A DNA stretch of 64,000 bases from Macrostomum lignano (GCA_002269645.1 NIVC01003150.1:52377-116376); one strand, 5' to 3'. Positions 11,006 to 58,056 are shown, counted from the first letter of the stretch. Numbers and translations are program-made. The notes: generated from the sequence alone by a model not told the origin.

Positions 11006-13522
11006 CGCTTGGCTAGTAAAAGGAAAATGAATCCGAATTCTTTCCGCCCCGGACTTCACTCTGCCGTACGGACTAACTCATGTGTTCTCCAATATCGATT
11101 TGTTCAATAATTTTTCTAATTTTTCTTGTTTACCTACAACCAACTCCACATATTTATTCGCAAAACCTGTTCAATTTCGTTGTTGAAAAAATAAACCTGA
11201 AGATGCACCTAGGAGTGCAAAACGCGTTGTTACTTACACAATGTTGATTTTCAGATTCATTTTCCTTTTACAAAAAAGTTCTGATCATACTTTAAATGTA
11301 ACCCTCCAGCAGGCTCCAGCTGGCCTCTTCAGTCCTCTTGAATAATTATTTAATACATTGAATTATACTGGCCAACCAACCATGCATTTTGCCTGAGCCA
11401 AAATGACTACTATGTATATTAAGATTAAAGATTTTAGTTTAGTTCAAATTAGCCGTCATTGACAAGCATTAATTGTTCCATATTGTTTAACCTAGTCTAG
11501 ATAATTCACATTTACTCTATATATTTTTTATCATGAGCTGTCAGGCATTCTACTTAGTTAGAGTGTATGATAAACTAATAATCTATCTAGACGTAGCCAG
11601 TTAGTTACCTTAACTGTAGCTAGGACCCTGGGGTATTCACGCTTTTCGGTGCCTGTGCTTTTCAGTGCCCGGCATTGCCGCATTTTGGTTGCCCCAGCTT
11701 GCTTTTTGATGACCTAATTATACATTAGAATTAGACACAAAAATATAGAAATTGAGCCCTAATTTAGCAGTAAGTGCTTTGTCTTTATAGTACTTATTTA
11801 CTTTAAAAAACTAAGGTATTACTCATCTTATTTAGCTAAAAATGGAAATCGAAAATGGTTTTTCAGGAATTTTCGATTAGGGATTCGATTTAATTTTATG
11901 TTGCTAGCCATGTCTCAGCTGCATCAAAATTTTAAACCAATGCCTAAATGCGCTTGTAATAAAATTGTATAGATTATGGTTGCATAGTTATGCCCTAAAA
12001 GATTTCAGCTCATTAAATAATATTGGCTTCATTTCCTAGGCAGTTTTATGTGTGACAGTGTAATTCATAATTTCGTAGAAGCATCTATCATATTTCTTTA
12101 TCTCACTTGCATACCATACTGTACTACTACTGTATTCTTTCATTTATTTTAACAATATTCCAAACGTATTAATATTGCGTTTCTGTTACTATTAGCTCAT
12201 AAATGCCTTATTTTTTGTAGCCTTGTATGTATTTATTCTATACTGCTTTTATAAGGAAAATCAAACATTTTGTAAGTTTTTATTCATAGCCTAGAAAATA
12301 ATAGAAAATCCACTATGTGGTTAAAGACAAGAAAAAGCTGTCCAATATGTAATACTAAAGCCAACCAATCCTACTTTAGAAGTTTATGGCAGGGTATAAA
12401 TCTCTTTAATCTATTTTAACTTCCTATAATATTGTACCTTGAACAACAGCTGCAGCACCCATATATGAATGCAGTACAACAAAATCACATTTAAATGTAT
12501 TTGAAAATAATGTAATAAAAATGTGTGAAATATGCATTATATTTTAAATGAAAAAAATTGTGTTAAAATGCAATATGCATAAAAAATTATTTATTATTTT
12601 AGCATTTTGGGCTCCTAGGATAGTCTTGAATATATACTAGCTCATATGTATATCAATAAACAAGGTTATATTTAGAAAAGGAACTAGACCTTTGTGTGCC
12701 ACACATAGAAGCCTAATATTTTTTATTGTAAAACTATTAGCAAAAATGTTTTGCATATGGCTATATATGTAAGCTCAAAAGATTAAGTGGTCCAATTAAA
12801 GACTACTATATACAAGAAAAATTATGTAAGCCAAAATAGTTCAACATCTTAGTAATTGACTTGCCAATATTAGCTCTATTAGATATAAGAATTATGCACT
12901 CCTGTAAGTGTAGGCCTAACTATTTATATCCATATAATGTAAATCAAAAGTTGTCTAAAAGTAGTCTAGAAGTGGTAAGTTGTATGTAGCCAGTAAAGGA
13001 CCAAAAAGTATTGCTTGTAGCCACTTCCAACTAGGTATTTTATTTTTTTTTCCTTATAATTATACTTTGCAACTGGCCATTGTCATGCCTACTTATAGTT
13101 ATAATTTATAGTCTATGTTTTTGCCTAAAAACCTCAATATCCATAACTGTATCCATAGCTATATTTAAACTTTTTTATATCTGGAGCTAGATAAGTAATC
13201 TAACTCATGGCTGTGGGCTAGATTAAGAGGTAAGGAAAAAGATCAAAGAAAAAAAGAAATGGGCAATGAAAGGATAGACAAAATGAAAGTAGAGATGAGA
13301 GAGAAGAGACATGGATATTAAGTGGGCCAGATTGCAACTATGAAGTTTCAAAGGACCCAAAGGGCTAAATAGAGAGGCTTTGCAGGGCACATGTGGCCCA
13401 TAGGCTTATTTAACAAATCATTTCACAGCTACTGTGCTAAGGAAATATAGATTTATTTTGCCAAACTCTAAAGGGAATTTCTAATTAATTAGTGATTTTT
13501 AGTCAAACGTTTTGTTTTTCAG

Positions 13523-15746
13523 GCTAGTCAGCAAAGCCTTGAAAATGGCGGCAGCGGCAGCGGCAGCGGCAGCAGCAGCCGAGCCAGCAGCGGCGCAGGC
13601 GGCAGGCTCCGCGCCAGCTCCAGGCCTCCCATGCTGCCGGTGCCTCCGGCCCTGTCACAGCAGCCGCTGCCTGTGCCCCTGGGTAATGACCAGCCGCTGA
13701 GCGACCTCACCACTATCCGACACAATGGCGCCGATATCGAGCTAAAGGCGACAGAATTGCAGACTGTGCGAGTGTTGGGCAAAGGTCGATTCGGTGTGGT
13801 CGATCAGGTAGGTCTGTTGAAACATCTTCAGCTGGTTCAACTCTTTTGAACTATTTCGACCCCTTCTAAAATCCCTCTGATGGTAGCCGGAGTCCCATTT
13901 TGAATCCCTCTATAATCCCTCTACAATTGTCGTTTCAGTCCAATCTTAATTCCCTTTACAGTGGCCGTTTCAGTCCAATCTTAATTCCCTCTGCAGTGGC
14001 CGTTTCAGTCTAATCTTAATTCCCTCTACAATGACCGCTCCAGCCCAATCTTAATTCCCTTTAAAAAATGACCGTTTCAGTCCAATTTTAATTGACTCTA
14101 CAGTGGCTGTTTCAGTCCAATCTTAATTGACTCTACAATCCCTCTACAATGGTCGTTTCAGTCCAATCTTAATTCCCTTAACAGTTTCAGTCCAATCTTA
14201 ATTCCCTTTACAATGGTCATTTCAGTTTACAGTCAAGTCCCTCTGGAGTCCCATTTGGAGTCCCTCTAATTCATGTCACCGATTCTTAGGACCAGAAATG
14301 CAAAAGCAAAGTCTCCAAGAGTCAAAGCAATTAACAACAAATCCAGGTGCGGCACCCGGGAACGAAATGCCACTTTGCGCTGAAGTATCTCCGACGGTCC
14401 AGCGACGCCCGCGAGCACGAGCTGCAGCTTCGCGAAATCAACGTACTCCGCCGGGCCGTTGAGTGCCCGTTCGCCGTGTACTTTTATGGAGCCATGTTTC
14501 ACGAGGGCGATATTCTGATTCTGATGGAGCTGATGGACGCCTCTCTCAGGCAGCTGTACCTCACCGCTTACAGTCCGGTAGTTGATCTGCCTTTCTCAGA
14601 CTCTGTACTGCGCTACGTGGCCTATTCTGTGCTGCGAGCGTTGAGTTACATGCGGAGTATCGATGTGATGCACAGGTTTGTCTGCTCTTGTTCCAGTTGT
14701 TTAGTCCTGATGCTTAGAGTGAAGATTGTTTGTCCTTTGCATTTACTGTAGTCGGATTTTGATTTTTGAAGCATAATTCACATTGAGATTTTGAAAGATT
14801 TATATGAAAATTGGGTGAGATTTTGAAAGATTCACATTAAGTAGGGTGAGATTTTGAAAGATTTAAAATAAAATAAGTTGAGATTTGAAGGATCTACAAT
14901 AAACTAGGGTGAGATTTTAAAAGATTACCAATAAAATAGGGTGAGATTTTGAAAAATCAACAATAAAATAGGGTGAGATTTGAAGGATCTACAATAAAAA
15001 GGTGAGAGTTTGAAAGATTTGCAATCAAATAGGTCAAGATTTTGAAATTTTCGTTATCATCACAGGGAGATTTTGCTGACCCGAGAATGTTCATCCCATT
15101 ATCCTTATTCTCTTCCCCGCCGTCGCAATCGCGCAGAGACGTGAAGCCCAGCAACATGCTGGCCAGCCGGTCAGGCCAGGTGAAAATGTGCGACTTCGGC
15201 ATCGCCGGCTTCCTCGACAACAGCATCGCCAAGTCGAACGTCGGCTGCGAGTTGTACCTGGCGCCCGAACGGATCCTGCCGCCAGCCCAGCAGAAGGAAA
15301 CGCAGTCCTCCAGAGCCGAAGGCGGCGACGGCCCCGACGCCTCCTCGCTGCACCGACCCGAAGGCTTCACCTCGGCGGCCGACGTCTGGTCTCTGGGCGT
15401 CAGCCTGGTCGAGCTGGCCACCGGCAGCTACCCCTACGGCCCCGTCATCGGCCCGTTTGAGCTCAACCGCCGTATAGTTGACGACCCGCCGCCAGCCCTG
15501 CCGGCTGAGTCTGTCGCCAGGTTCGACGCCCAGCTGCCCGGCTTCCTGTCGCGCTGTCTGGAGAAGAATCACGAGCAGCGGTGGCGGTTCAACCGGCTGC
15601 TCAGCCATGCCTATCTGGCTGGCATCGACTCAGATCCGGCTAGAGAGGCCGGCCTGCGAAATGAGACTGCCGGATTTGTCTGCGACGTGCTGGACAGCGC
15701 CAGCGGCGACTCCGATGCCAAACGGCTGCATCCGTCCGAGGTTTGA
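13523..15746 (+). CDS. MAP2K6: Dual-specificity MAP kinase kinase, MKK3/6-like
   Basis: Exons 13523-13807, 14347-14675, 15137-15746 with consistent phases. Motifs GKGRFGVV, FALK, HR|DVKPSN, DFG, activation loop DNSIAKS, LAPERI and DVWSLG. Start codon ambiguous. Confidence 0.88.
13925..14230 (+). repeat. About 35-bp intronic minisatellite (CAGTGGCCGTTTCAGTCCAATCTTAATTCCCTCTA)
   Basis: About 8 degenerate units in MKK intron 1. Confidence 0.9.
14780..15045 (+). repeat. Degenerate intronic repeat (GGGTGAGATTTTGAAAGATT core)
   Basis: About 8 units in MKK intron 2. Confidence 0.8.
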
Positions 15747-24999: not shown

Positions 25000-26418
25000 G
25001 CATGGCAATGCGGTGTTAATTATTGTCATTGGCAACTTTAACTACCATTTTGGATGTACTTCTAGTACTGGTAATATTGGCCACTTAATCACTGAGACTT
25101 TAAAGATGATTGGAGCTCCTGATTTAATGGAGGGGGTGTGAGGGGAACTCTCAAGTCCCTGAGGTTGGGGACTCAAGCATGCACATTGTGTAGATTGGGT
25201 GGTGGGAGGGTTTATTTAAGATGAATGTTTCCATTCCAATTCAAGGGGAGCTCTTAGGTTTCTAGGGTCAAAGACTCAAGCAACTGAGTTTTTCATGCCA
25301 CATGTACATTATGGTTGGGATAATAGGGGGGGGGGCTAATTGACTATAGATAAGGATATAAGAAATCTTTACTTATAGTAGAATTCTACAAATTATTTGA
25401 AATCATGTCTAAAACTGAGGGCCTATTAGATGCAAAAATGTACTTTAGTTATACAAAAATAGTACAAACACAAATGATTTTCCTAAATGGGAACCTTTTT
25501 AGGAAAGGTTACAAATGATAATTCAACCATGTTGAACATGAATCTACAGTCATTTTTTGTAGATTTTTCAGCAAAAAATACCTATTCCAATGTACCATGG
25601 CCCTATTTTGTGCCTAGATGTCTTTTTAATATCTAGAATTTTTTTATTATTAGTAGATCATTAAAATGTTATTTTAAGTTCAGGTTAGACTAAGAAAGCA
25701 ATAATAAAACTAATATAGGCTCAAAGGCTATATAGTGAAAGGCTTGCACATTCTTTAAGAAAGACTGACTTGTCTTTGACTTTGGAGACATAAAATGTTG
25801 ATAATCTACATTGATTTTATTGAATCAAGAATTACAATCCATTTTAATGTATTAAATTGACTTACTTACTAGGCCTGTTTGCCAAAAAGCTTGCTTATAA
25901 ATTTCCTAAGAAAGCTACACGCTTGGCTATTCATCTGGTATAAGCAGAGTAAACTAATTTTTTTAAATTATTTGCAAATTTTATGGCTAAAATTAATGTT
26001 TTAATAACTTTTTAACTAGGTTTAACTTTAAATATTCTTAAAATATAATATCGTATAGTATAGACTATAGCATTCCTATTTGCTAAAAATGTATTTGTAT
26101 TGTAGTAAATAGCCATTATTGCAAGCAGCATTTGGCATTGATTGGCCCCTAGCAATGCAAGTATGATATGGCATGTTAGCAGTCTAGCACAGTTTAGACC
26201 TTGACTGTAATAGAGAGTTATATCAATAATCTTCTTCAATTATTCAATCATATCCAAAAATATATATCAAGCTAAAGGTAGACTATATCAAGTAATAAAA
26301 TTTGTGAAGACTAAATGATAATACACTACATTAAATTTAAAGCCAAGTCTAAAAACTTCTAGAATATCCTTCCTATTGTTTAATAAAATTAGGCCTTAAA
26401 GTCAAGACAAAAAAGTAT

Positions 26419-28723
26419 ATAGAAAGCTTAATATCAACATTTGAATATGATTGCAATTTCTAACAACTTCAACGCGTTTTGCACGCCATGGTGCATCGTC
26501 AGGATTTTATTAGAACGATTTGAGAAATTGAGATTGAAAGCAATTGATTAAATATTGGTTTTTGCAACGTACACAGGTAAGGAGGGTAAGATTGAAAACA
26601 ATTGATTACAACTTGGCTTTAACAACATACAAAGGTATAGTAGGCAGGAGAGAGAATTATAGATTGAGATTGAAAATTAAACCAAATGTACACAATTCTT
26701 GTCCAGTGGTCAAAAGGCAGAATCAGGGGCGGTAGCTTAAGTAATTGAACGTCAAGCTAAGTGTACACAGCATGCACGACTGTGTCACTCACTGTTCAGA
26801 AAACGTGGAGAATGTGACCTGCACCACTATGTTGTAATTGGGTGTTGAGATTTGGGGTCTGAGCTTTTATGTGCAGGGCCTCGAGAATTCTAAGTTTGGA
26901 GTCAGTATGGCTTTGGTCAATGATTTTAAAGTGTTCTTCTGGTTTTCAGTCATTGCAGTTAGTGCATTCAAGGAGGTGAGTTTGCATAGCAGATGGTTTG
27001 AGCCAGTGTTCCCTGATCCTTGTGTGTAGGTGTCTTTTGGTTTTCCCCACGTAGGAGACGCTCTGGTCCACAGAGCAGTTAAATTGGTAGACAACACCTG
27101 CACGCAGAGTACAAGGAACACGCGACTTTAATCTGCTAACAAAGTTCCCAATCTTGTTCGTATGGAAGACGACCTGGATGTTACGATTGAAAGAGGCAAA
27201 GAATAACCTACGCATTCTGTTTTTAAAGGCTAGAGATGGAGGTCCGAGGAAGGGGAGATGCAGAATGGGTTCAAATTCTTTAGTGGTAACAGATTGCTCA
27301 GGTTTTTGTTTGGTGATTTTGTCCAAGATGAACTTGTTGATGATTTTTTGGACCAGACAAATGGGGTAGTCATTTTGATGGAACAGTCTGGTGAGGAACT
27401 GCACCTCCCAGTCAAAGTTGATCCAGGTGTTACAGGTAGTGAAAGCTCTATAGAGCAAACACCTCACGAGCCCAGTTTTCCATTGTCTGGGGCAAGTGGC
27501 TTGGAAGTTGAGAATGAGATTGGTAAAGCTTTTCTTACAGAAGACTTTTGTGGAGAGGGTTTCCTTACTGTAGTCAATGTCAATGTCCAGGAAGGGGAGT
27601 CTTTGGTCAACAGCATGTTCAACCGTGAATTTTATGTTCTTATGAGTGGAGTTGAGAGCGTGGAGGAACTGATCAGTTTTTTGCTCCTGATCAAAGATGG
27701 CAAACGTATCATCAACGTAGCACCTATAGAATTTGGGGGCACAGTTGAGACATCCAGTTTTCGGTTTCCCAGTGGGCCAAGCAGACGTTTGCCAGAGTGG
27801 GGGCCAAGGGGCTTCCCATGGCACAGCCATCAACTTGCCTATAGTATTTATTGTCAAACATAAAGATTCCAGAGATAGCAAAGCCCAGGAGTTTTCTAAA
27901 GGATGACTTGGCCATGGTGGGAGGGTTCGTGTTGTACACCAACTCAGTGGCATAGTCAATGGCCAGATCAAGGGAGATGTTGGTGAAGAGAGAAACATCA
28001 AAACTACATAGAGAGTCGGATCTGTTGAGCATAGGGTTGAACTTTTGAAGGTCATTGAGGAAGTCTTTATTGGATTTGGACATGAAATTGGAAGGAATGC
28101 AGGGCTTGATAAGAGAATCCAGGTACTTGGCAACTTTGTATTCGGCGGTGTTGACCATGGAGACAATTGGTCTAAGGGGATTGTCAGGTTTGTGGACTTT
28201 ACAAACCCCGTAGAGTTGTCCCGGTTGACTGCCACTAGGTAAGATGCGCTGATAGATGTTTGGTTCGATGTGTTGTTTGATATGGTTGCAGAGGAAATTT
28301 TGAAGAGATTGTTTGGCTTTGAGGATAGGATGCGACATGGTGACAGTGTCATGAGTGCCCAGGCACTGGAATTTGGTTTGGTCTTGGATGATACTGTGGA
28401 GTTTGTTGTTATAGTCATCGGTATTGAGAATGGCCACGCCATATCCTTTGTTGTAACTAACAATTTTAATTTTGTCAGATTTGCTTAACTGTTTGAGAGT
28501 ACAGTGTTGGAGTTGATTTTTCTTATTGGCAAGGCAGTTGGTGGCTTTGATAACAAAGTTTTCAAATTCAGCAATGATTTTTCTCCTAAAAGTATCTTGG
28601 ACTGATATAGTATTACTTATCCTGACGATGCACCATGGCGTGCGAAACGCATTGAAGTTGTTAGAAATTGCAAAGTTGTTAGAAATTGCAATCATATTCA
28701 AATGTTGATATTAAGCTTTCTAT
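26419..28723 (-). mobile_element. Penelope-like retroelement (RT + GIY-YIG), disrupted, with inverted terminal repeats
   Basis: RT motifs KVHKPDNPLRPIVS, SFDVSLFTN, GCAMGSPLAP, YVDDTF and LPFLD, with a frameshift near 27750. GIY-YIG motifs GVVYQFNC..YVGKTKRHLHTRIREH, then a TGA at 26946 and KLRILEALHIK..PNLNTQ to a stop at 26796. Inverted repeats at 26419-26505 and 28619-28723. Confidence 0.92.
28619..28660 (+). ncRNA. Minimal hammerhead-ribozyme core in the Penelope terminal repeat (second copy on the - strand at about 26468-26505)
   Basis: CUGACGA-U-GCAC/CAUGGC/GUGC stem II-GAAAC-GC(G/A)UU; stem I pairing is weak. Confidence 0.55.
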
Positions 28724-29189
28724 TTATTCTTCTCGCCAAGCGAGCGACTCTACCAGCAAAAAAGTATATAATTACAAAAATGATTATATAGCTAACATTG
28801 GTCAAATAAGCTTATTACTATTTAGCTAGCACTCTTGCCCTAATTGCTAGTCAAAAGTTTATCATCACCAAGCTTAATATATAAATTTTAGCATAAGTAA
28901 ATTATTAGAGCTAGAATTCTACTATAACCAATTTTTTCACATATCTACATCTATAGCCATATCTTGAAATTTTTCCCATAGCCTATCTGTATCCATATCC
29001 ATAGCTAGTAAGCTCTGTACTATTGTAACTACTATTCTTTAACCCCGATAGACACTGGAGAAGTAGCTGAATGCTGCATTTGCAATTATGCTATATGTGG
29101 CCTTTGAAGTGCATAGCAATTTAGACAATAAGATGGGCAATGACTGATTGGCTAGCAGAGGCCCTTTGCCCTGAGCTGCTACATAAAGT

Positions 29190-30608: not shown

Positions 30609-30862
30609 TGTCGTGTCGTGGCTGGCTAGCCAAACTTGAGCCGCAAATGGGCGAGAGGTTGTTATTTATTGTAGTTGGCATTGCACATAGATGTACATGC
30701 AGATACGAGTAAAGCATCAGCTAATAGATTAGACGGTTAGGCATAAGCGTACATTGACAGACAGAGCAGGCGGGGAGAGAGCAAGCAGTCCTAAACTCAG
30801 CGCCAATAACAATTGGGGTGCAGCCCCACACTGCGCACTTCAAGTCAAGTCACGATACAACA
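30609..30862 (-). repeat. Gypsy 3' LTR
   Basis: Identical by eye to 34739-34992. Confidence 0.96.
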
Positions 30863-30870
30863 TCCCCTCA

Positions 30871-47374: not shown

Positions 47375-49493
47375 TCAGAACGGGTAGCGGTGGTTCAGCG
47401 GCATGGTGGGCAGCATCGGATTCCTATACGGGTCCGAGGTGAGCGGCGGCCTCAACTGGCCGCCGGCAGCAGCCGCCGCGCCGTAGACATTAGCAGCGGC
47501 GGCGGCAGGATTATAGAAACCGGACGGCGGCATGAAAGCGGCGGCTGCGGCGGCGGCCGCGGTGCCGGGATGAGCAGCAGCGGGTCCGGCCGCGCCAGGC
47601 TTGGGCGGCTGGACGAACGGGGCAGTCGGGTAGCTGCCAATGGCGCCCGGGTCCCTGGCGCCGTACAGGCTGGAGTTGTACGGCAGCGACTGGTGCAGCG
47701 GGTTGTACAGGTCCGTTGAGGCTCGGTAGGCGTCGCCGAACGACCGGTAGGGATCGGGCTTGGCCGCTGGGGGCGGGGGGAGGCAATTGGCATCAGAAAT
47801 AGCATTTCCATGCTAATCCTATGGGTGTCACTCTGGTTGTGGGATCATTGTGTGTGGGAGTTCGATTCTCAGTGCGTGGGATTTCGATTCTCAAAGTGTA
47901 TGATTTCGATTCTCAGTGTGTGGGATTTTGATTTTCAGTGTGTGGGATTTCGATTCTCAGTGTGTGGGATAACGATTCTCAGAGTGTGAGATTTGTGTGG
48001 GATCATGACTCAGGGTGGGGTAATTGTGTGGGACCATGACTCCGAGTATGGGAATTGTGTGGGATCATGACTCAGAGTGTGAGATTAGTGTGGGATCATG
48101 ACTCCAAGTGTGGGAATTGTGTGGGATCATGACTTAAGGTGTGTGATTTGTGTGGGATCATGACTTAAGGTGTGTGATTTGTGTGGGATCATGACTCAGA
48201 GTGTGGGATTAGTGTGGGATCATGACTCAGAGAGCGGGAGCCGCCTTACCAGAATCCGAGGACAGCTGGTTGCGCAGATACTCGAACGCAGCCGTCGGAT
48301 TGGCAGTCGAGGTTGCCGCCGAGGCAGCGCCGGCGCCGGTGCCGTACGCATCCCACGGAGTTGCCAGGCCCAGCGACGTCTGGCCAGCGGCGGCAGCGGC
48401 GGCGGCAGCAGCGGCTGCGGCTGCAGCAGCCGACGAGGTGGCCGACGAAGCCGTCGACGAAGCGACGGTGGCCGATGGTCCGGCGGCCGGCTGTAGGCCG
48501 GGTGCGACAGTTGACGAGGTGGACACGGCGGAGGCGGGGTCGGCGGATGAAACCCCAGCCTGCTGCTGGCGTACTGCGCGTACGGGCCGGCGGCGTCCAT
48601 GTACTTGGAGCCGAGAGCGGACAGGGAGCGCAGGTGATCAGGGTGCACGGGAAAGCTCGGCCTATTAAACTGATTGTTAAACATCTGGCCGTAGGCGCCA
48701 GCTGAATAATAGGACGCCAATAGGGACGAAGACGAGCCCAGAGCGCCCAGGCCGGCAATGGAGCCCAGCGCCTTGGCCTGATCTGCTGCAGCCGCGGCCG
48801 CAGCTGCCGCCGCAGCTTTGGCTTGCTGCTCCTGCTGCGGTTGCTGCTGCTGCTGCTGCACCTGTTGAGCCTGTTGCTGGGAGGCTGCTTTACTATGCCG
48901 TCCGCCAACCCGCTCCTTGTCCTGAATACTCTGTATATCTTCGAGCACCTCGTCTAGGAAGTCTTTGCCGGCGTCCGATTGACCGGCAACGCTGGGCGGA
49001 TCTCGGGTGACGCTGCTGATGAGGTCCGGAATCTGGTGCCGGTGCTTGGCCGGGGTGCCGCCAGCGGAGTCGGACGGCTGCCGTTTCATCGCCTGCTGCG
49101 AAGTGGACGGGCCGCCACCGCTGCGTCGCTTGACGGCGGCCTCCGAAGCTACCACGGACGAGGCCGGGGTGACAATGTCGGTGATGGAGTGGCCGACCTT
49201 GGCGCTAGCGGCCTGCTGCTGCTTGTCCTCTAAGAAGTCGATAAGATTTGAGTCCTGCTCCAGATTGCTAATTATGCCGTCAATCTGCGAGTCGATCTGC
49301 TTAGGCGCCGCCGGCACACCGTGGGGCGGGCCACCGCCTCCCCGACTTGCCGATTGCTGATGCGCCTGAAGCTGCTGCTGCTGCTGCGGCGGCTGCTGCT
49401 GGCCGGCAATGGGCGGAATGTACGGCGCGTCGTTGCTGCTATCTAAATCGCTGAAGCCGTACAGGCAATTCTCGTCTTGCTGAGCTTGAGAAG

Positions 49494-49552
<59 letters not shown>

Positions 49553-52500
49553 GGCGGCGGTGGCGGCGGAGGCGGCTGCTGCTGATGGGGCGCAGTCTGG
49601 TAAGGATGAAGCTGAGGCGGCAGCTGGTTGTCTTTACCGGACGAGCCTCCGCCGCCAACAGCAGCGTCGGAATCGTCCGAGTCCGAGGCGGACTGGCTGT
49701 CGTTAAAGGTGTCCGGAACTGGCCGGTTGGCTAGAGCGTGGAGCAGCGGCGGCAGCGGGTGCTGCGGATGCATCTGGCGGTGGTGGCGCAGCAGACAGAG
49801 GCGCAGCCGGCAGCGATAGTCGCAGAGTTGGCAGGCAAGCGGCCGAAGCCCCGTGTGCTTGCAGGTGTGGGCCCCCATGGCTGACGCGCTGCTGTACATC
49901 TTACCGCAGCCGGGCCACGGACAGACCATCCGGCTGCCGTGCATCTCGGCGATGTGACGTCGAAGCTGCGAACGGCGACTAAATACTTGAGAACAGTTGC
50001 GCACTGGGCAATCATTCGATAGCCTATGTTGCTGCTGTTGTTGCTGCTGCTGTTGTTGCTGCTGCTGCTGCGGTGGTGGAGGCGGCGGCTGCTGATGCAG
50101 TGGAGTCTGCGGGTACAGCTGCGGCGGCTGCTGCTGCTGAGCCTGGAGATGGTGCTGTGGCAGCTGCTTAGCGTGAGCCTGTGGTATGTTAGGGTGCTGA
50201 GGCATGGGCGTCTTACTCGCCACCTGGACTTGCATGCCACGCTGCTGCTGCTGCTGCTGCTGCTGTTGTTGATGAAAAGCCGCAGCCTGCTGCTGACGGC
50301 GCTGCTGCTCCCCCTGCTGTCGTTCAAGTGCGGCAGCGGCGGCCTGCTGAGGATGGATGGACTTCACGTGCGATCGGAGAGACGATTTGCTGGCGTAGCT
50401 TTTGCTGCAGTGCTTGCACATGAATTTGTGAGCTGGCTGAGCTGCCACCTGCTGCTGCGGCTGTTGCAGCTGCTGCTGCTGCTGCAAGTGCTGGAACTGC
50501 GGATGTTGCGACTGATGCAGCTGCTGATGATGCTGCGGGTGATGCTGCTGCTGCATCAGCTGCTGGTGGTGCTGGTGATGATGCGCAGCCGGCGGAGCGC
50601 CGCTAGCAGCTGCGGCGGCTGCGGCGGCCATGTGCGGCGCGGCGAAGAACTGCGGCGCGTACATCATCTGGGCGGCGGCGGCAGCGTGATGCGGCTGCAT
50701 AGCGGCTGGGAACCCAACTGCGGCCGCGGCGGCGGCGGCGGCAGCTGCCCCAGGCTGTCGGAAATGTTGATGAGCAGCGGCCGCCAGCTCGTGCGGCTGT
50801 AAGTGAGATTGAGACTGCTGCTGCGACTGCTGCTGTTGCGGCTGCTGATGGTGATGATGCTGTTGGTGATGGTGCTGCAGGTGCTGCTGCTGCTGCTGTA
50901 CGGCCGCTGGACCGCCGGCTGCCATGCCGGGCACCTGCGGTTGCTGCGGCGGCGGCTGCGGCGGCATGGGCTTGCGCGGAGGCACCCTGGGCGCGTGATA
51001 TGCCTCGTATTGTTCCACGTCGATGCTCTCGGCGTTAGCCAGAATGTCGTCCAGGCCTGTCATAGCAGTGCCAAGCGATTTCCAATCCTTCGGGAGCGAC
51101 GATTGCGGCGTCTTCTGCTGTTCTTCGGCCAATTCTGCCGGCTTCTCGGCCTGGGCCTGGTCGGGCTCGGCAGTGTCCGAGTCGCGCGGCTCGGCCTCGC
51201 CTAGCGACACGCCGCTCGTGTCCAACAAACTGACGCCGGTGTCGGCAGTCGGGACGGCGTTCGCCGAACTGGCACCTTCGCCATCGTCGCCGCGAGCCTG
51301 CTCGATTGCCGAAGTGTCGACGGCGGTAGAATCCTCGGCTGCTAAAGATTCGCTCAAGTTAGGCGCAGCGGAGTCTTCAGTCTCTACTATTGGCTTTTTT
51401 GCGTCATTGCCATCTATGCCAGATTCAGTAGTTTCAGCTGCCGCCGTTTTTTCATCAGTGGCAGCAGTAGTTGATTCTAATGCGGAATCCGGAACAGCAT
51501 CGGCAGCAGACGGCTTCGTATTGAGCTTTTCTCCATCATTCAGAGCGGGCGCATCGTCTTCTGTAGCAGTCTCGGGCATTAAGGTCTCGTCTTGAACAGT
51601 AGGCTGCTTTTCTGGCAATTTCTCTGACTGGAATTCCGGACCGCGCTCGATGGAAGGCTCAGTCTCCATAGTAGCAGGCTGAGCTGCTGCAGCTGGGGCA
51701 ACCGTTGGCGGTGCTAAATCTTCTTTTTCCAACTCAGCAGACTGCTTAATTGATTCAATAGACTGTTCAACCGACTCAGCAGGTTGCTCTGTCGACTCAG
51801 TGGACTGCTCAATCGACTCAACAGACTGTTCGACTAAATCAGCATTAGCAGGCTGCTCAATTGACTCAGCTGACTGCTCAACTGACTCAGCTGACTGCTC
51901 GATTGACTCAGCTGACTGCTCAATGGACTCAGCTGGCATCTCAACCGACTCAGCTGACTGCTCAACCGACTCAGATGGCATCTCAACCGACTCAGCTGAC
52001 TGCTCAACCGACTCAGATGGCATCTCAACCGACTCAGCTGACTGCTTGATCGACTCAGCTGACTGCTCAACCGACTTAGCTAATTGCTCAATCGACTCAG
52101 CTGACTGCTCAACCGACTCAGTTGGCACCTCGACTGACTCAGCTGGCATCTCAACCGACTCAGCTGGCATCTCAACCGACTCAGCTGACTGCTCAACTGA
52201 CGCAACTGGCATCTCGATTTTCGCGGCTGACTGCTCAACTGACTCAGCAGTAGGCTCAGCCGATTCAGTACTCTGCTCAACTGTGTTTGACTCAGCAGGC
52301 TGCTCAGGCGGCCCAGAAGAATCGAATTCCTCTCCTAATTCAGCACCAGACGCTTGCTGCTCCATTTGAAACACCTCCGATGCAACTTGAGGCTCTGGCC
52401 GATCAGGCATAGATGATTCAGCAATGTTATTTTGACCTCCGCCAAAGTCTGCCACTTCCTGAGCTCTATCAGCTTTGACAGGCTCCATCTGTGCTTCAGT

Positions 52501-52701
52501 ATTAGGCAATTGTTCTTTCAGAATGCTTGTGTCTGTTGGAGCAGTCAGACTGGAGTCCAAAAGTTCTCTAGCAGCAGCAGGGGCTGCATTATCTCTGATG
52601 GGTGGCGCACTGTCACAGTTGGAATTTTGGTCATTAGAGATGGCATCAGCTGGTGGAGGCGTCGGTGACTGAGCATCAGCCATGCAACGGCAGCCATGCA
52701 T
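47375..52701 (-). CDS. Large low-complexity C2H2 zinc-finger protein (probable transcription factor)
   Basis: Exon 52701-48250 (apparent 1-bp deletion at 48553-48556), then exon 47766-47375. Four fingers: CKHC..HVKSIH, CPVRNC..HIAEMH, CPWPGC..HTCKH and CQLC..HHRQMH, with linker TGLRP. Poly-Q/A/H tracts. Confidence 0.82.
47830..48230 (+). repeat. Intronic GTGTGGGATCATGACT-type minisatellite
   Basis: Fills the zinc-finger gene intron. Confidence 0.9.
51740..52300 (-). repeat. Coding 21-bp repeat encoding AESVEQS-type heptads
   Basis: In-frame repeat inside the 1493-codon ORF. Confidence 0.8.
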
Positions 52702-53668
52702 TAATTCAATTAGTAGAAGTAATTAAACTTTTAACTTGATATTGCTTATTTGAATTTTTAAATCAGTTTCTATGTACCATTGTGCTATTCTCTAAAACCT
52801 ATAGATAAGAAGTTGTAAATGATGCCTTCTAACTAAAATGCAATTAAAGCATCATTTTTCAATAAAATACCTGTCAATGTTAACTTAATATTTTCAGATA
52901 ACTTTGCCTGAAAATATTTTGTTTATCAGTATCCATTTTAAAAATTAAATGCTTCCTAGAAAGTGACAGGACAATTTAAACATATTTTAGTAGCAGAATT
53001 AAAAAGTTAAATTTTATCAATAATTTTTTCTATGTTTTCATAAAAATTATTCTATAAACTAAAAAGTTTTTAAATAGAAAAATAGTAAAAACCAAAATGT
53101 AAGACCAAATAATATATTTCCACTTTTAATCTTTTTAACAATTGAAAATCTATTTGTAACTTAGATATCAGTCAAAACAATATGTTCAAATAGCTCAATT
53201 AGATAATAAAAAAATACAATACAGAAATATCAAGTTTAAATTCAAGCTTTTAAATCTTAAGTCCATTATACTAAAATAAATTTTTTATATAGAGCTCTCT
53301 AACTCATATTTTACAGTTTAGATATATACGCTTGTATATTTATGTGGGGAAAATTGTTCCTGTCTTTGAAATATCATTATTAAAATATTCATTGAAAAAT
53401 TACTTTGTTTAGATATCAGATAGAAAAAATTATATTCTAGCTTTACTAATACTTATATTAATGGCAAATATCTATATTAAAATTATATTTTATTTACTTA
53501 TTCAAGCTCTTGAAATTATTTATGGTAAATTATAACTATAACTAGGCCCTAAATTACAATTTATATGAGACTTTTAGGTCTGTATTATACAAAAAACAGT
53601 ATACTAAAATAATTAATTAATAAGAGATTGGTATCATATTGGGATACAACTTATAACAACCAACTTTA

Positions 53669-54525
53669 CAATGTTTATCCCCAAAGTAAGTTTCCCTCAT
53701 ATATAACTTAGCACTGAAGATGCTCAGCTAAGTGCCATGTATATTGTTGCTTTTTTGTCTATGGCCTAACCCCAAATAGGTTGTTAAGTCCTAGCATGTT
53801 TTTGAGTTGCATGCCTGCAACTCAAGCATACAACCCTTTGCAACCATGGCCACATTGAGCTCATTCTCTTGCTACAACTGTGCTATCTAGAAAATTGATA
53901 TCAGAGATTCACCAAAAACTTGTAAGATTCCTAGGAGAAGCTACACTATTTATTCAAATGGTCAAGAAGTAGGTGTGGGAAATTTGAGAAGGATGGGACT
54001 GCACAGAAGACAAAAGCATTCTGGATAACCAAAGTGAATGCTAAGTATTATTGATGGGTGCTTCAAGAGAAACTGCAACCAGTGATAAGGAAAAAGCAAC
54101 TAGGCCTTCCGGAGAAAGGTATCATCTTCCATTACTACAACACCCCAATGCATTAGGCCAGATAGGTTGAAGAGCTGCTCAACTCCTAGAACTGAGAAAT
54201 TCTCTACCACTTATACTACTTGCCTGATTTGGTTCTAGCAGACTTTAATCTGTTCCCAAAGATAAAAGAGAGCCTTTGTGGCTAGCAGTTTTGGATCTGA
54301 GGAGCAGATGAACAATAGCACTTCATCAGCTTTCCAACATCTGGGAATCGCCAGCTGCAAGCCTGATTTTGAAGTGTAGGTGCATTGCTAGGAAAAGTGC
54401 ATTGAGCTTGGTGGCCAATTTATAGAATGACAAATACTTGAAGTTGTGGCTAGACAAATTTTATATTTTTTAAACTTTGCTTACTATTAGCAGCTGACTG
54501 AAACTTACTTTTGGGATATACCTTA
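53669..54525 (+). mobile_element. Internally deleted, heavily mutated mariner transposon
   Basis: TIRs of about 25 bp (53669-53693 and 54501-54525) flanked by TA. HTH relic IHQKLVRFLGEATLFIQMVKK*VWE. Catalytic relic from 54034: VNAKYY..KKQLGLPEKGIIFHYYNTPMH..*N*EILYHLYYLPDLVLADFNLFPKIKESLCG (cf. HHDNAxxH and YSPDLAPSD). Confidence 0.88.
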
Positions 54526-55471
54526 TAGTCTTCTACTTGTTGAATATATAATTATAGATTTAAAATAGTTTATAAAAATATTTTAATTAATCTTTTAATA
54601 TTAATAATTTACAATTTAACAATTATTATTTTAAAACAAAAATTAAAACAGCTTGATTTACTCAAATATAATAAGTGATTTTTATAAATAGAAATATAGA
54701 AATATTTCCTAATGTTTATACATAAAAAGTTAAATGATCTCATTTTGCTTATATATTTTTATAACCATGGCAATATATATACTTGACAAGGTTCTTATGT
54801 CTTATAACCTAATACTATTAAACACTAGCTAACTTAGTTGATTTAGCCTATATAATTATAAATTATAGACAATAATAGTATCCTAAAAAATAATAAATCA
54901 TAGAATAAATGATCTTTTATATATTTATTTACTTTTTTTAGTCAAGGTATAAAACAGTTTTTTTTAAAACTAGTTTATTTATCACATGGCTAATATAATT
55001 TTATAAGTTGTATATCAATATTGGCAGCATTTTTCTGTTATCTTTTTTGTCCTTTTTTAGGAATAGTTTTTGTAGTTTTCATTTTCGTAGTCGTATTCAT
55101 ATAATAGTAAAAATAATTTTCTTCTTATCCATATGGCATATTAACAAGACAGCTATCTTTACTTGCTAAAGATACTGTAAAAATAGTTTACAATTTGTTA
55201 CATACAATTTAGCTGCAATAAAATAGTACAACCTTGCTTTATCATTTGTCTTTCTAAGAACTATTCTTTTTATATTATTTTTACTTTATTTTTGAACTGT
55301 TAAACTATATGTAAGTTGGAAGAAGGGAAAGTGCCAGGTCAGCCAAGACTGGGCCTGAAACCAACGACTGCCAGGCTTTAGCTGGGTTGGGCAGAACTTG
55401 GCCGGCAGGCACAGCCGCAACTTCACCAGGTAAGCTAGTGGGTCAAGCCATGCTCATAGTAGGTCAGGCCA

Positions 55472-55815
55472 GGGCTGTAGCCTAGCGGTAGTGCAGCTGC
55501 ACTGGTGTGCCAGTGACCTAGGCTCGATTCCAAGTGCAGTCACATTAATTTGGGGCTGAATTGGAATCTCAGCTTGGCTCTGCTTGTGTAATTAATAGCC
55601 TTAAAAGCCAACCTCCTCAGGCGCAGTGAAGTTTACATGCCTAACAATAACGATAGTATAAAGTTAGCCACTATATATTCCTATGTGTGTGTGCCTGCAT
55701 ATGTTTTCTTACACTTGTATGCCTGCTCAGGGGAGTCAGCAGAATGGGCAGTAATGCCTCTTGCCAGTTGTGTGCCAGGGTGCACACAACTCCCTACCTC
55801 TAATAAAATTAAATA
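55472..55815 (+). mobile_element. tRNA-derived SINE-like element
   Basis: A-box-like TAGCCTAGCGG and B-box-like GGCTCGATTCC in a head of about 70 bp with a degenerate acceptor stem; ends in an AT/A-rich tail. Confidence 0.5.
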
Positions 55816-58056
55816 AAGTTGAAAGAAATACATTTATGATTGAATAAATTATCATTAAAACAGAATAATCTAGAACTGATTCAAGTCTATAGATCAATAG
55901 CTTTTTAGTATCTTCAAGTTCCCTTATAAAAACTATAAACTATTTAGATTATACATGCTAACACCTGTCCAACTTATCTAAACTGGATGGATAAAATGGC
56001 TACTAGCCAAGGCAAGTTGCAAAATAAAAAATGCAAAAAAAAAAATTGGGAGAAAAAAAGAAGAGTAGGCTTAAAACAAGTTATTCCTATGATATTAGGC
56101 CTATGCATGAGGATAATCATTACCATTATGGCATTAATATATATATATATATTTCAAATATTTATTGTTATGATTCAACTAGATCATAATTAATAGATAA
56201 GATATTTTAGACATATAATATTTAAAATTAAAATAGAAATTTTTATATATACCCAGGTTTTTGCTAACAATAGGCCCTAGGCCTAGGTCTAAAAAATAAA
56301 ATACAAAATTGCATCTAAGCCTTAACCCAGTCATATTTGAGGATAGGCCTATAAATTTATATTAAATTTATATTATAAATATAAATATAATAGACCCTGT
56401 AAATTTGAAGTCAAAATGTTATAAATCCTAGTTCCTAGCTAGTCTAAAACATTTTTAGACTCTAACAAATATGTAGTCATAGACCATATGATTTATCTTG
56501 AAGAAAGAAACTTTTAGGCCTAAAAAGAAATAATGCTAGGCCCTGGTCCCCTATCATATTATATAAATATTGTAAACCATATATAGACTACTTATTTGGT
56601 AGTACTAGTATTCTATGCCATGTAGGAATCTTTAAAGCCTACCTAGGGCCTAGTCTAATAATTAGGCAATAACTCTACATAACGTAGGCCGAGAAATTTA
56701 TTTACCAATTACTGAAATACATTGAGATACTAACATTGATACTATGTTCCCCAGTCTATCAGTGCACAATGTGTTAAATGGATTCAATCTTCAATGTGCA
56801 GTGTGCAAGCGTACAAGTTAAAAGAATTCTTGGGACAACTATTAGGTCTAGACCGTCTAGGCCTATGGCACAAAACATAAGCAGGTCTAGCGGGTAGCGG
56901 CTACTGGCTAGCGGCCTTGGCTTAATAGGTGAACACTAAGTTGACCGCATACCTTTTAATTTTGTTATCATCACTGATAGTATGCCCTAGTCATAGTGCA
57001 ATAGGTCGAGTATCTGCGTACAAATTGTATGCGAATAGGCCTAGCGCTAGATTGTCTATTAACAAGACTTGTTTAGAAATTTAATCAAGCAATAAAGTCT
57101 TTTCGCGCGAATTTAAAATGTCATATCATGTTAAAAAGTATTTTTTTACTTATTTAAAACTTACAGTTAAAAAACATTAACATAAAAATATAATTATCAA
57201 ACATAATATAACCTACTAAAAAGAAATAAAACAAAATAATCTTTGTTAAACATACTACTTTCAAGCCGTTGTATTTTCAAGGAGTTAAAATTCGAGGAGT
57301 TGAATTAAAAAACTCTTCGTAATTTGTTCAACTGCATATTATTTGATTAAAAGTAAATGCACACGATGGTACTGCAAGCAGTTATGCTTCGAAAATTTCG
57401 AGTGAGTATTAGTGATTCAAGAAAATTAAAATGGTAAATTAAATGCTCACGAAAAAAAACAAGAAAGCTCTGGAATTAAGGGTCAGTGTTTTTAAAACAT
57501 TGGCATGAATGCAGTTATTTTATATAAAAAAACAACACTAATTAGTTTCTACTTACTTTCTGAATTGCTCCGTGTAATTCTGATAGGCTTACAACACTCA
57601 TAAACAAAATTACAGCAGTTTGAACTTTCAAGTTTCGTCGTAACGAAACGAATTCGAATACTTAATTACAAGGATTACTGAATATAGCTATATACAGTGG
57701 TCCTTGACTAATTGTCCAGAAGAGGGTTTTTTCTTGTTGCCGAAACAATTTTACCGGAAGTCTTGTCACTGAAACGGCTGTAAAAATCCTATAAGTTGTT
57801 GGCTTTGTTTAAAGAAATTAATCGCAAACAATAAATCACAATGGTAAATTTTTAAGTCCTTTCTTCCAGCTGGTTTTTGTTGATCTTGAAATCTTCTCTC
57901 GATTTGAATAATTTGTTCAGTTGTTTTATTTTTATCCCTTGACTTAAAGAAGTCCTTTGATAAGTTAAATGCAGCTAGGCTTTAGCCTCAGAGAAGTATA
58001 TAAATTAGGAATCAGAGGGGCCGGAGGCCCCTTGCGCGCATGCGTTCGCAGAACAG

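What the first reader, a model, noticed from the sequence alone, without database searches (positions are those of the whole stretch)
11300..56700. Domain-restricted C:G>T:A hypermutation of old repeats, including CpA: RIP-like or non-CpG-methylation signature in an animal
Seen: AT-rich islands at about 11.3-13.5, 25.0-26.4, 28.7-30.6, 35.0-36.3 and 52.7-56.7 kb have almost no CG and many TA, CTAG and TAGGCCTA motifs. They abut CpG-rich exons and young repeats. Three independent old repeats inside them differ from related or inferred ancestral copies almost only by C>T/G>A, at CpA as well as CpG (detailed separately). Established: fungal RIP converts CpA to TpA in repeats, while animal 5mC decay is mainly at CpG; DNMT3 enzymes have some CpA activity. 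Inference: a germline methyltransferase or deaminase erodes these domains. Such a system is not a standard feature of animal genomes.
Basis: partly seen in the sequence, partly recalled or inferred. Interest (0 to 1): 0.88.

Follow-up and report, generated by a model that had tools for sequence, protein, structure and literature searches.

The report
Methylation-type C-to-T erosion islands in flatworm
In this Macrostomum lignano (flatworm) window, old intergenic DNA has been worn AT-rich by C-to-T changes aimed at CpG and, more weakly, CpA; this looks like the mutational footprint of patchy germline DNA methylation by the animal's own DNMT1/DNMT3 enzymes, not a fungal RIP-like defence.

Summary
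The window is Macrostomum lignano. AT-rich, nearly CpG-free islands lie at about 11.5-13.4, 25.3-26.4, 28.8-30.6, 35.0-36.4 and 52.7-56.7 kb. Three transposon relics inside them (hAT-like MITE, mariner, tRNA-SINE) differ from their family consensus mostly by C>T/G>A.

Pooled over 17 decayed copies, C>T per site is CpG 0.40, CpA 0.13, CpT 0.06 and CpC 0.05. T>C and transversions are each about 0.02.

The effect depends on location, not age. MITE copies with equal T>C and transversion load differ 6.7-fold at CpG and 4.2-fold at CpA, and CpG loss tracks flank CpG depletion. It is also ongoing: between the window and its 1%-diverged paralogue, only CpG (8.9% vs 0.93%) and CpA (2.7% vs 1.05%) differences are raised in CpG-poor stretches.

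It is not RIP-like:
- CpG dominates.
- Young multicopy repeats are untouched, while unique DNA is eroded.
- There are no strand-coordinated runs.
- RIP indices are negative.
- No RID-like or AID/APOBEC gene was found.

The genome encodes DNMT1, DNMT2 and DNMT3. The best reading is mosaic germline methylation with a DNMT3-type non-CG (TACAG-like) side activity. That is a variant of a known kind, inferred from sequence and not shown by methylation data.

The parts
11518..13361 (.). Eroded AT-rich island 1 (core with CpG o/e<0.35 at 12351-13111). It lies just 5' of MAP2K exon 1 and is mostly unique DNA.
   Evidence: GC 0.28 and CpG o/e 0.15 at 12-13 kb. Segmentation. Apart from the MITE relic, and a short stretch just 3' of it (about 12.05-12.29 kb: one 88% hit and several 45-bp hits), only paralogous copies match in the genome. 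MAP2K exon 1 is at 13523-13843.
11632..12050 (+). Truncated relic of a hAT-like MITE. The full element is about 840 bp with TIRs starting GGTATCCACGC and an 8-bp TSD.
   Evidence: More than 40 genomic copies at 74-82% identity. Alignment. Spectrum versus consensus: CpG 10/36, CpA 7/42, T>C 10/252.
25336..26415 (.). Eroded island 2, unique old DNA with no recognisable repeat.
   Evidence: GC 0.33 and CpG o/e 0.08. Only paralogues match in the genome.
26416..28760 (-). Penelope-like retroelement (RT plus GIY-YIG) flanked by inverted terminal repeats (26416-26620 and 28619-28760). CpG level is intermediate.
   Evidence: Pfam RVT_1 and GIY-YIG matches, both weak (below the gathering cut-offs). Terminal repeats are 98-99% identical to many genomic copies and inverted relative to each other. 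CpG o/e is 0.36-0.51.
28761..30608 (.). Eroded island 3, interrupted by a 43-bp tandem array (29188-29704) whose unit lacks CpG.
   Evidence: No dispersed repeats found.
30609..34992 (-). Very young Ty3/Gypsy LTR retrotransposon inserted into the island. LTRs are at 30609-30862 and 34739-34992, and the TSD is GTTGC. CpG o/e is 0.69-1.04.
   Evidence: Pfam protease, RT, RNase H and integrase. LTRs are 254/254 identical. TG...CA ends and the TSD were read. The site is empty in paralogue C1713.
34993..36420 (.). Eroded island 4 (core 35243-36101), unique DNA carrying six TAGGCCTA sites.
   Evidence: GC 0.34, CpG o/e 0.11 and TpA o/e 1.21. Motif positions. No dispersed repeats.
52722..56705 (.). 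Eroded island 5 (cores 52852-55024 and 55180-56506), immediately upstream of the 5' end of the minus-strand ZnF ORF.
   Evidence: GC 0.26-0.37 and CpG o/e 0.06-0.32. Segmentation. Repeat content.
53667..54523 (+). Mariner relic with an internal deletion of about 450 bp. Family consensus has GC 0.52 and CpG o/e about 0.9; this copy has GC 0.36 and CpG o/e 0.06.
   Evidence: One genomic copy keeps an intact 355-aa transposase ORF.
55472..55809 (+). Relic of a tRNA-derived SINE.
   Evidence: CpG 17/40, CpA 9/51, T>C 1/141.
56972..57862 (.). Contrast stretch: AT-rich (GC 0.30) but CpG-normal (o/e 1.1). It shows that AT-richness and CpG loss are separable.
13523..15743 (+). MAP2K gene, three exons (13523-13843, 14344-14628, 15039-15743). 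A flank that is not CpG-eroded.
   Evidence: tblastn of the M. lignano MAP2K protein P0003. CpG o/e is 0.6-1.06.
48220..52722 (-). 1500-codon polyQ / C2H2 zinc-finger ORF, GC 0.55-0.65, CpG o/e 0.77-1.0. A CpG-normal flank of island 5.

Best explanation
The islands are old intergenic DNA: unique sequence plus dead transposon copies. In the heritable cell lineage of M. lignano this DNA sits in a methylated compartment. Exons, young transposons and most tandem arrays sit in an unmethylated one.

Proposed mechanism:
1. DNMT3 lays down 5mC and DNMT1 maintains it at CpG.
2. 5mC deaminates to T, so CpG is lost about 10 times faster than other sites.
3. A weaker, asymmetric non-CG activity of DNMT3 type adds CpA>TpA changes, favouring Y-[A/C]-C-A-G and avoiding a 5' G.
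4. Loss of CpG and CpA, with ordinary T>C and transversion rates, drives GC down to about 0.26-0.35. It raises TpA and leaves the surviving C mostly in GpC.

Shown here: the context-specific, location-dependent, ongoing C>T excess, and the presence of DNMT1, DNMT2 and DNMT3 genes.

Inferred: that 5mC is the intermediate, that CpA changes come from non-CG methylation, and what directs methylation to these stretches.
For: Organism and enzymes:
- PF00145 finds three C5-methyltransferase genes, each in three paralogues. Their best solved relatives are DNMT1 (E 2e-64), DNMT2 (3e-26) and DNMT3A/B (8e-21).
- Reviews state that M. lignano keeps DNMT1 and DNMT3 and has low 5mC.

Spectrum over 17 decayed copies of 3 families:
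- CpG 0.395, CpA 0.127, CpT 0.059, CpC 0.054.
- T>C 0.017 and transversions 0.021.

Location, not age:
- Nine decayed and eight non-decayed independent MITE loci have equal T>C (0.0168 vs 0.0168) and transversions (0.016 vs 0.014).
- They differ at CpG (0.381 vs 0.057) and at CpA (0.107 vs 0.026, p=1e-10).
- CpG loss correlates with flank CpG o/e (rho -0.58, p=0.0015), and the transversion load does not track flank CpG o/e (rho -0.09).
- Mariner copy L055 has a broken ORF, transversions 0.020 per site and a CpG-rich flank, and lost 4% of its CpG. L053 has transversions 0.021 and an AT-rich flank, and lost 49%.

Ongoing and specific, from window vs paralogue C1713:
- YpG differences are 8.9% in CpG-poor stretches against 0.93% in CpG-normal ones (p=4e-20).
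- YpA differences are 2.7% against 1.05% (p=1e-5).
- YpT, YpC and transversions are unchanged.

Context:
- CAG is hit at 0.20 and CTG at 0.07, so the effect is asymmetric.
- A 5' G protects (GCA 0.07 vs HCA 0.18).
- At CpA, position -2 T/C gives 0.16-0.18 against A/G 0.07-0.08.
- This matches the high GpC o/e in the islands.
Against: - No methylation data could be consulted; the primary bisulfite paper is not held.
- Non-CG methylation strong enough to leave an evolutionary footprint has, to my knowledge, not been reported in animals.
- A methylated intergenic compartment beside unmethylated gene bodies is atypical for invertebrates.
- In the small three-way polarised set, the CpG excess in CpG-poor stretches was only 2.7-fold, and all substitution classes rose somewhat.
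- With GC-only classification, remaining island CpGs showed no excess (3/111).
- The sample is one window plus about 50 loci. Many copies are paralogous duplicates, and the two-way comparison is unpolarised.
- The resemblance to the DNMT3B TACAG motif is recalled from memory, not tested.
Confidence: 0.6

Rival explanations
1. CpG loss comes from regional methylation, but the CpA (and weak CpT/CpC) excess is not methylation. Instead, unmethylated C deaminates faster or is repaired less well in these domains, because of heterochromatin with poor base-excision repair or easier melting of AT-rich DNA.
For: In decayed MITE copies CpT and CpC are also mildly raised, 2-3 fold (p=0.08 and 0.03). A 5' G, the strongest stacking partner, protects. 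In the three-way set all C contexts rise in CpG-poor stretches.
Against: In the recent paralogue comparison only YpG and YpA are raised. YpT, equally weak in pairing, is not (1.41% vs 1.17%, p=0.45), nor is YpC. CpA exceeds CpT about twofold overall. The CAG preference and the -2 pyrimidine effect look like enzyme specificity rather than melting. T>C and transversions are unchanged, so there is no general repair or mutation-rate difference.
Confidence: 0.2
2. Age only. A uniform AT-biased, CpG-hypermutable mutation process acts everywhere, and the islands are simply the oldest DNA.
For: The islands are old: relic transversion load is 2-2.5% against 0.3% between paralogues. Young insertions such as the Gypsy element with identical LTRs sit inside them. 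Total paralogue divergence is the same in and out of islands, 1.01% vs 1.07%.
Against: Copies of equal T>C and transversion age differ 6.7-fold at CpG and 4.2-fold at CpA. CpG-normal stretches show no CpG hypermutability at all over the same period (0.93% against about 1.1% for other contexts). CpG loss follows flank state; it is only weakly related to transversions (rho 0.34, p=0.085), and transversions do not follow flank state.
Confidence: 0.04
3. RIP-like defence. A duplication-sensing machinery deaminates C in repeated DNA in the germline, as in fungi.
For: C>T-dominated decay of transposon copies that includes CpA>TpA, plus AT-rich islands with raised TpA.
Against: - CpG is hit far more than CpA.
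- (CpA+TpG)/(ApC+GpT) is 1.2-1.5 in islands and the composite index is negative.
- Young multicopy repeats are intact: mariner copies within about 1% of consensus with CpG o/e 0.82-0.96, identical LTRs, and CpG-bearing tandem arrays.
- Unique DNA is equally eroded.
- No strand-coordinated runs (z=0.6 and 1.3).
- Only DNMT1-, DNMT2- and DNMT3-type methyltransferases were found.
- The process is slow and continuous rather than burst-like.
Confidence: 0.02
4. An AID/APOBEC-type DNA deaminase edits these domains or the elements within them.
For: The strong C>T excess over T>C.
Against: No APOBEC_N, NAD1 or NAD2 match in the genome. The same search method does find six ordinary deaminase-fold genes, each in three copies. 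C>T and G>A are equal on the top strand and show no runs. Specificity is set mainly by the 3' base (G > A), not by the 5' TC, CC or WRC contexts recalled for AID/APOBEC enzymes. A DNA transposon, a MITE, a SINE and unique DNA are all affected.
Confidence: 0.04
5. GC-biased gene conversion or selection holds GC up outside the islands, and the islands merely show the raw mutation bias.
For: The equilibrium GC implied by recent substitutions is 0.24 in islands and 0.54 outside, matching the observed composition.
Against: Gene conversion would shift all strong-to-weak changes alike and raise weak-to-strong changes. Instead CpT, CpC and T>C rates are the same in both compartments, and only CpG and CpA differ.
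Confidence: 0.05

Closest known systems
Mosaic germline CpG methylation footprints in invertebrates (bimodal CpG o/e; methylated repeats in cnidarians, PMC8857917; stick insect, PMC2747282)
   Same: DNMT1 and DNMT3 are present. There are two compartments, one CpG-depleted through 5mC deamination and one with CpG o/e near 1. The stick-insect study also reports methylated repeats with some CpA and CpT methylation.
   Different: Here the depleted compartment is AT-rich intergenic DNA, while exons and gene flanks are CpG-normal. That is the reverse of the usual gene-body pattern. A CpA>TpA footprint accompanies the CpG loss. Young transposons appear unmethylated.
DNMT3-dependent non-CG methylation of mammals (mCA in oocytes, embryonic stem cells and neurons)
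   Same: The order CA > CT and CC, the asymmetry (CAG hit, CTG not), and a preferred extended context of pyrimidine at -2, non-G at -1 and G at +2. This resembles the TACAG motif I recall for DNMT3B.
   Different: Mammalian mCA is not known to leave a clear evolutionary footprint. Here it is inferred only from substitutions, and no methylome was examined.
Fungal repeat-induced point mutation (RIP)
   Same: C:G>T:A decay of transposon copies, AT-rich islands next to GC-normal genes, and raised TpA.
   Different: The process is CpG-led and not triggered by duplication. Unique DNA is affected. There is no RID-like enzyme, no strand-coordinated runs, and RIP indices are negative. The process is slow and continuing.
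AID/APOBEC editing of retroelements in vertebrates
   Same: Excess C>T/G>A in mobile-element copies.
   Different: No enzyme gene was found, there is no strand bias or clustering, specificity is set by the 3' base, and DNA transposons and unique DNA are affected alike.
Deamination/melting model of isochores (Fryxell and Zuckerkandl; context-dependent mCpG decay, PMC5054122)
   Same: CpG decay is stronger in GC-poor surroundings, giving a self-reinforcing drift to AT.
   Different: The scale here is 1-4 kb with sharp borders. The contrast is about 10-fold, far above the roughly twofold effect I recall for mammals. CpT is not raised, which melting would predict.

Membership tests
Fungal RIP | Triggered by sequence duplication: all sufficiently long, similar copies are mutated, and unique DNA is spared. 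| tested here: not met
   Mariner copies within about 1% of their consensus keep CpG o/e 0.82-0.96. Gypsy LTRs are 100% identical. Tandem arrays with CpG in every unit persist. Unique island DNA is eroded.
Fungal RIP | A dinucleotide preference led by CpA, with RIP indices TpA/ApT high and (CpA+TpG)/(ApC+GpT) below about 1.03. | tested here: not met
   CpG 0.395 against CpA 0.127. The second index is 1.17-1.54 in islands, so the composite index is negative.
Fungal RIP | A RID/Masc1-type cytosine methyltransferase homologue. | tested here: not met
   PF00145 hits fall into three genes whose best solved relatives are DNMT1, DNMT2 and DNMT3. A very divergent gene could be missed by the exon-wise search.
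Fungal RIP | Strand-coordinated runs of C>T or G>A. | tested here: not met
   Runs tests give z=0.64 and z=1.32, with equal counts on both strands.
Mosaic DNMT1/DNMT3 CpG methylation footprint | DNMT1 and DNMT3 genes present in the genome. | tested here: met
   The literature agrees.
Mosaic DNMT1/DNMT3 CpG methylation footprint | CpG transitions strongly elevated over other sites in the depleted compartment only. | tested here: met
   8.9% vs 0.93% between paralogues, with transversions equal. 0.381 vs 0.057 in MITE copies of equal age.
Mosaic DNMT1/DNMT3 CpG methylation footprint | 5mC actually present on the depleted compartment in the heritable cell lineage. | not testable with these tools
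   No methylome data are available here. Secondary sources say only that 5mC is low overall. That would fit a methylated compartment that has already lost most of its CpGs.
DNMT3-type non-CG methylation | Context order CA > CT >= CC, and asymmetry (not a symmetric CHG pattern). | tested here: met
   Excess over non-decayed copies is CpA +0.081, CpT +0.018 and CpC +0.024. CAG 0.20 against CTG 0.07.
DNMT3-type non-CG methylation | Direct detection of mCA. | not testable with these tools
   Needs all-context methylation calling.
AID/APOBEC editing | An AID/APOBEC-family deaminase gene. | tested here: not met
   No match to PF08210, PF18778 or PF18782. The positive control PF00383 finds 18 places. 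None of the three searches had a control genome known to carry the family: NAD1 matched in none of the 14 bacterial/archaeal controls, and APOBEC_N and NAD2 matched only below the cut-off. Absence is therefore not proven.
AID/APOBEC editing | A motif set by the 5' neighbour, plus strand bias or clustering. | tested here: not met
   The 3' base dominates, the 5' effect is only avoidance of G, and there is no strand bias or runs.
GC-biased gene conversion / isochore-type fixation bias | All S>W changes are depressed and W>S raised in the GC-rich compartment, whatever the context. | tested here: not met
   CpT, CpC and T>C rates are equal in the two compartments.

The most novel reading that the evidence does not exclude
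In the neoblast/germ lineage of M. lignano, DNMT3 deposits enough non-CG (TACAG-like CpA) methylation, alongside CpG methylation, on intergenic domains to shape base composition over evolutionary time. The same effect could instead arise if the methyltransferase itself promotes deamination. To my knowledge this would be the first animal genome with a heritable mutational footprint of non-CpG methylation. It would come with an inverted mosaic: intergenic DNA methylated, gene bodies and young transposons not.
Probability: 0.35. Interest if true: 0.7.

Novelty: new variant of a known kind. Interest (0 to 1): 0.5.

Why it matters
Flatworm methylomes are essentially undescribed. [quoted passage not shown]

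The sequence itself predicts where methylation sits in M. lignano: old intergenic DNA, not gene bodies or young transposons. It also predicts a non-CG component with a defined motif. Both predictions can be tested directly in a species with routine RNAi and transgenesis.

If confirmed, this would show that non-CpG methylation can mould an animal's genome composition. It would also give a sequence-only way to map past methylation in species without methylome data. If the islands turn out to be unmethylated, an unexplained CpG- and CpA-specific mutational process would remain to be found.

Tried and rejected
- Three-way polarisation (window, C1713, C1708) with islands defined by GC alone gave a muddled result: CpG 3/111. 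GC<0.37 also captures AT-rich stretches with normal CpG. Re-classifying by local CpG o/e resolved this in the two-way comparison. The three-way set stays small and noisy.
- My first alignment of the window MITE copy ran past the homologous 420 bp and gave a meaningless 37% divergence. I restricted it to the homologous part.
Genome-wide dinucleotide maps could therefore not be made, and only short copies were fetched.
- The primary M. lignano genome/bisulfite paper is not held.
- Rejected explanations: RIP (indices), APOBEC/NAD families, strand-run test, age-only decay, gene conversion.
- Rfam found nothing in the window.
- A literature search for TAGGCCTA found nothing relevant.
- Islands 2-4 contain no detectable dispersed repeats, so no fourth family could be added.


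Full report
**What the window is.** A MAP-kinase-kinase exon (15033-15743) is 94% identical to Macrostomum lignano proteins. The window's assembly has 764.4 Mb in 5269 contigs, so the animal is the free-living flatworm M. lignano. The locus exists in three paralogous copies. Contigs C1713 and C1708 are collinear with the window and differ by about 1% in substitutions. About 26% of the window is tandem repeats.

Recognisable genes and elements are:
- the MAP2K gene, with exons at 13523-13843, 14344-14628 and 15039-15743;
- a 1500-codon polyQ/zinc-finger ORF on the minus strand at 48220-52722;
- a Ulp1-protease ORF at 24.1-25.0 kb;
- a Penelope-like element at 26.4-28.8 kb;
- a Ty3/Gypsy element at 30609-34992.

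Per-kb statistics show GC 0.26-0.37 and CpG o/e 0.06-0.32 at 12-13, 25-26, 35-36 and 53-57 kb. TpA o/e there is near 1.0-1.2 and GpC o/e is 1.5-2.0. Neighbouring exons and young repeats have CpG o/e 0.8-1.1.

AT-richness and CpG loss are separable. The stretches at 46-47 and 57-58 kb are AT-rich with CpG o/e of 1.1-1.2.

CTAG is twofold enriched in the islands, and TAGGCCTA is the most over-represented 8-mer.

**What the islands contain.** Genome searches show that most island DNA is unique apart from the paralogues. Three dead mobile elements are embedded in it:
- a truncated hAT-like MITE at 11632-12050;
- a mariner with an internal deletion at 53667-54523;
- a tRNA-derived SINE at 55472-55809.

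The Gypsy element that splits one island has 254/254 identical LTRs, a GTTGC target duplication and an empty site in the paralogue. Young repeats abut islands simply because they insert into old DNA.

**Substitution spectra.** I fetched other genomic copies of the three families, built consensuses and polarised the changes.

The mariner relic has 145 changes over 845 sites, of which 115 are C>T or G>A and 9 are T>C. Its ts/tv is 5.9. Its per-site C>T rates are CpG 0.56, CpA 0.25, CpT 0.12 and CpC 0.11. The SINE and MITE relics behave alike.

Over 17 decayed copies (4279 C sites) the rates are CpG 0.395, CpA 0.127, CpT 0.059 and CpC 0.054. T>C is 0.017 and transversions are 0.021.

Further features of the spectrum:
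- Both strands are hit equally, and the order of C>T and G>A along the elements shows no runs.
- Two mariner relics at different loci were mutated largely independently.
- A 5' G protects (GCG 0.23 vs HCG 0.46; GCA 0.07 vs HCA 0.18), which explains the high GpC of the islands.
- At CpA the favoured context is pyrimidine at -2, A or C at -1 and G at +2.
- CAG is hit (0.20) but CTG is not (0.07).

**Location, not age.** For the MITE family I compared nine decayed and eight non-decayed loci, taking one copy per paralogue group.
- T>C is identical in the two groups (0.0168).
- Transversions are the same (0.016 vs 0.014).
- C>T differs at CpG (0.381 vs 0.057), CpA (0.107 vs 0.026, p=1e-10), CpT (0.036 vs 0.018) and CpC (0.035 vs 0.011).

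Grouping was by CpG loss, so the CpG contrast is by construction. The other contexts are independent tests.

CpG loss correlates with CpG depletion of the 3 kb of flanks (rho -0.58, p=0.0015). It is only weakly related to the transversion load, and that load does not follow flank state (rho -0.09).

A mariner copy with a broken ORF and a transversion load of 0.020 lies in a CpG-rich flank and lost 4% of its CpGs. Another copy with the same transversion load in an AT-rich flank lost 49%.

**The process is still running and is specific.** I compared the window with paralogue C1713. Stretches with local CpG o/e below 0.7 differ from CpG-normal stretches as follows:
- YpG: 8.9% vs 0.93% (p=4e-20).
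- YpA: 2.7% vs 1.05% (p=1e-5).
- YpT: 1.41% vs 1.17% (no difference).
- YpC: 0.97% vs 1.05% (no difference).
- Transversions: 0.28% vs 0.35% (no difference).

In CpG-normal DNA, CpG is no more mutable than any other C. That argues this DNA is not methylated in the heritable lineage.

The three-way polarised set is small and noisier. It does show C>T exceeding T>C only in the CpG-poor class.

**Enzymes.** The genome has three cytosine-5 methyltransferase genes, each in three paralogues. Their best solved relatives are DNMT1, DNMT2 and DNMT3A/B. Reviews state that M. lignano, unlike planarians and parasitic flatworms, retains DNMT1 and DNMT3 and has low overall 5mC. Low global 5mC would fit a methylated compartment that has already lost nearly all its CpGs.

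No RID-like gene was seen, and no APOBEC_N, NAD1 or NAD2 match was found. The same method finds six ordinary deaminase-fold genes.

**Interpretation.** The pattern has these elements:
- CpG transitions raised about tenfold in one compartment only;
- a smaller, asymmetric CpA component with an enzyme-like extended motif;
- no change in T>C, transversions or (recently) CpT and CpC;
- equal strands;
- continuity over time.

This fits deamination of 5mC laid down by a DNMT1/DNMT3 system on particular stretches, with a DNMT3-type non-CG side activity.

Each rival meets contrary evidence (details in the rival list):
- Age-only decay is contradicted by the equal-age contrasts.
- Gene conversion is contradicted by the unchanged CpT, CpC and T>C rates.
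- Melting-driven deamination is disfavoured by the recent CpT result.
- APOBEC-type editing does not fit the lack of strand bias or the 3'-base specificity, and no such gene was found.
- RIP fails every defining feature I could test.

The methylation step itself, and especially CpA methylation, is inferred and not shown.

**Comparison and novelty.** CpG erosion of methylated compartments is classical in animals. Methylated repeats, with a little CpA/CpT methylation, have been reported in invertebrates.

What is unusual here:
- the eroded compartment is intergenic, while exons are CpG-normal;
- young transposons seem exempt;
- CpA is co-eroded strongly enough to help make the DNA AT-rich.

I class it as a new variant of a known kind, of moderate interest. 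It rests on one window and about 50 loci.

**Unexplained.** TAGGCCTA, often as CTAGGCCTAG and sometimes tandem, is scattered in unrelated flanks of AT-rich DNA:
- 13 sites in this window, 12 of them in two clusters;
- 64 in 91 kb of other loci;
- 4782 genome-wide for the 10-mer, against 279 for a reversed control.

It is native to a young MITE, and GGCC itself is 2.6-fold over expectation. It is therefore not merely an end product of CAG>TAG.

Noticed in passing
window 12911, 35053-36263 (6 sites), 56096-57036 (6 sites); loci L004-L030; genome-wide: The palindrome TAGGCCTA (often CTAGGCCTAG, sometimes tandem as TAGGCCTAGGCCTA) is about 45-fold over-represented in AT-rich DNA, each time in a different flank. 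The 10-mer occurs 4782 times in the genome against 279 for a reversed control. C>T decay variants (GGTCTA, TAGACC) are also enriched. Its origin is unknown; a transposon footprint, a hexamer microsatellite or a binding site are possibilities.
   Followed up: partly
window 30609-34992 (-): A Ty3/Gypsy LTR retrotransposon with 254/254 identical LTRs, TG...CA ends and a GTTGC target duplication. Its gag-protease-RT and RNaseH-integrase regions are read from two overlapping open frames (32759-34795 and 30840-32834), so pol is not one continuous ORF. It is absent from the paralogous site on C1713, so it inserted after the duplication.
   Followed up: yes
window 26416-28760 (-): A Penelope-like element (reverse transcriptase plus GIY-YIG nuclease ORFs; both Pfam matches weak) bounded by terminal repeats that are inverted relative to each other. 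The 26416-26620 terminus is 98-99% identical to dozens of genomic copies.
   Followed up: partly
whole window vs G000 contigs C1713, C1708, C2803, C3608: The locus is present in three diverged paralogous copies (substitutions about 1%, many indels), consistent with the polyploid history I recall for this species. In addition, 52.7-57.9 kb has 100%-identical copies on two other contigs, which looks like assembly redundancy. DNMT and deaminase genes also each come in threes.
   Followed up: partly
window-wide, e.g. 447-1778, 16069-18616, 22326-23578, 40729-41361, 43296-44480, 60818-62131: An extreme density of minisatellites with 15-47-bp units: 16.6 kb of 64 kb is tandem repeat. Several arrays have strong G/C and A/T strand skew.
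   Followed up: no
window 48220-52722 (-), especially 51732-52248: A 1500-codon open frame with long polyQ/polyA/polyP tracts, a weak (below cut-off) Pfam C2H2 zinc-finger match, and a 21-bp coding tandem repeat giving about 24 copies of a SAESVEQ-like heptad. No start codon or exon structure was worked out.
   Followed up: no
window 24064-25041 (-): An ORF with a Ulp1 (C48) protease domain in a GC-rich, CpG-normal stretch bordering island 2. It may belong to a transposon.
   Followed up: no
G000 C1298:297185-299097 and paralogues on C283 and C1567: On C1298 and C1567 two deaminase-fold (PF00383) ORFs lie within about 2 kb on opposite strands (about 12 kb apart on C283). The second ORF carries an in-frame stop in two of the three paralogues. 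They were not classified.
   Followed up: no
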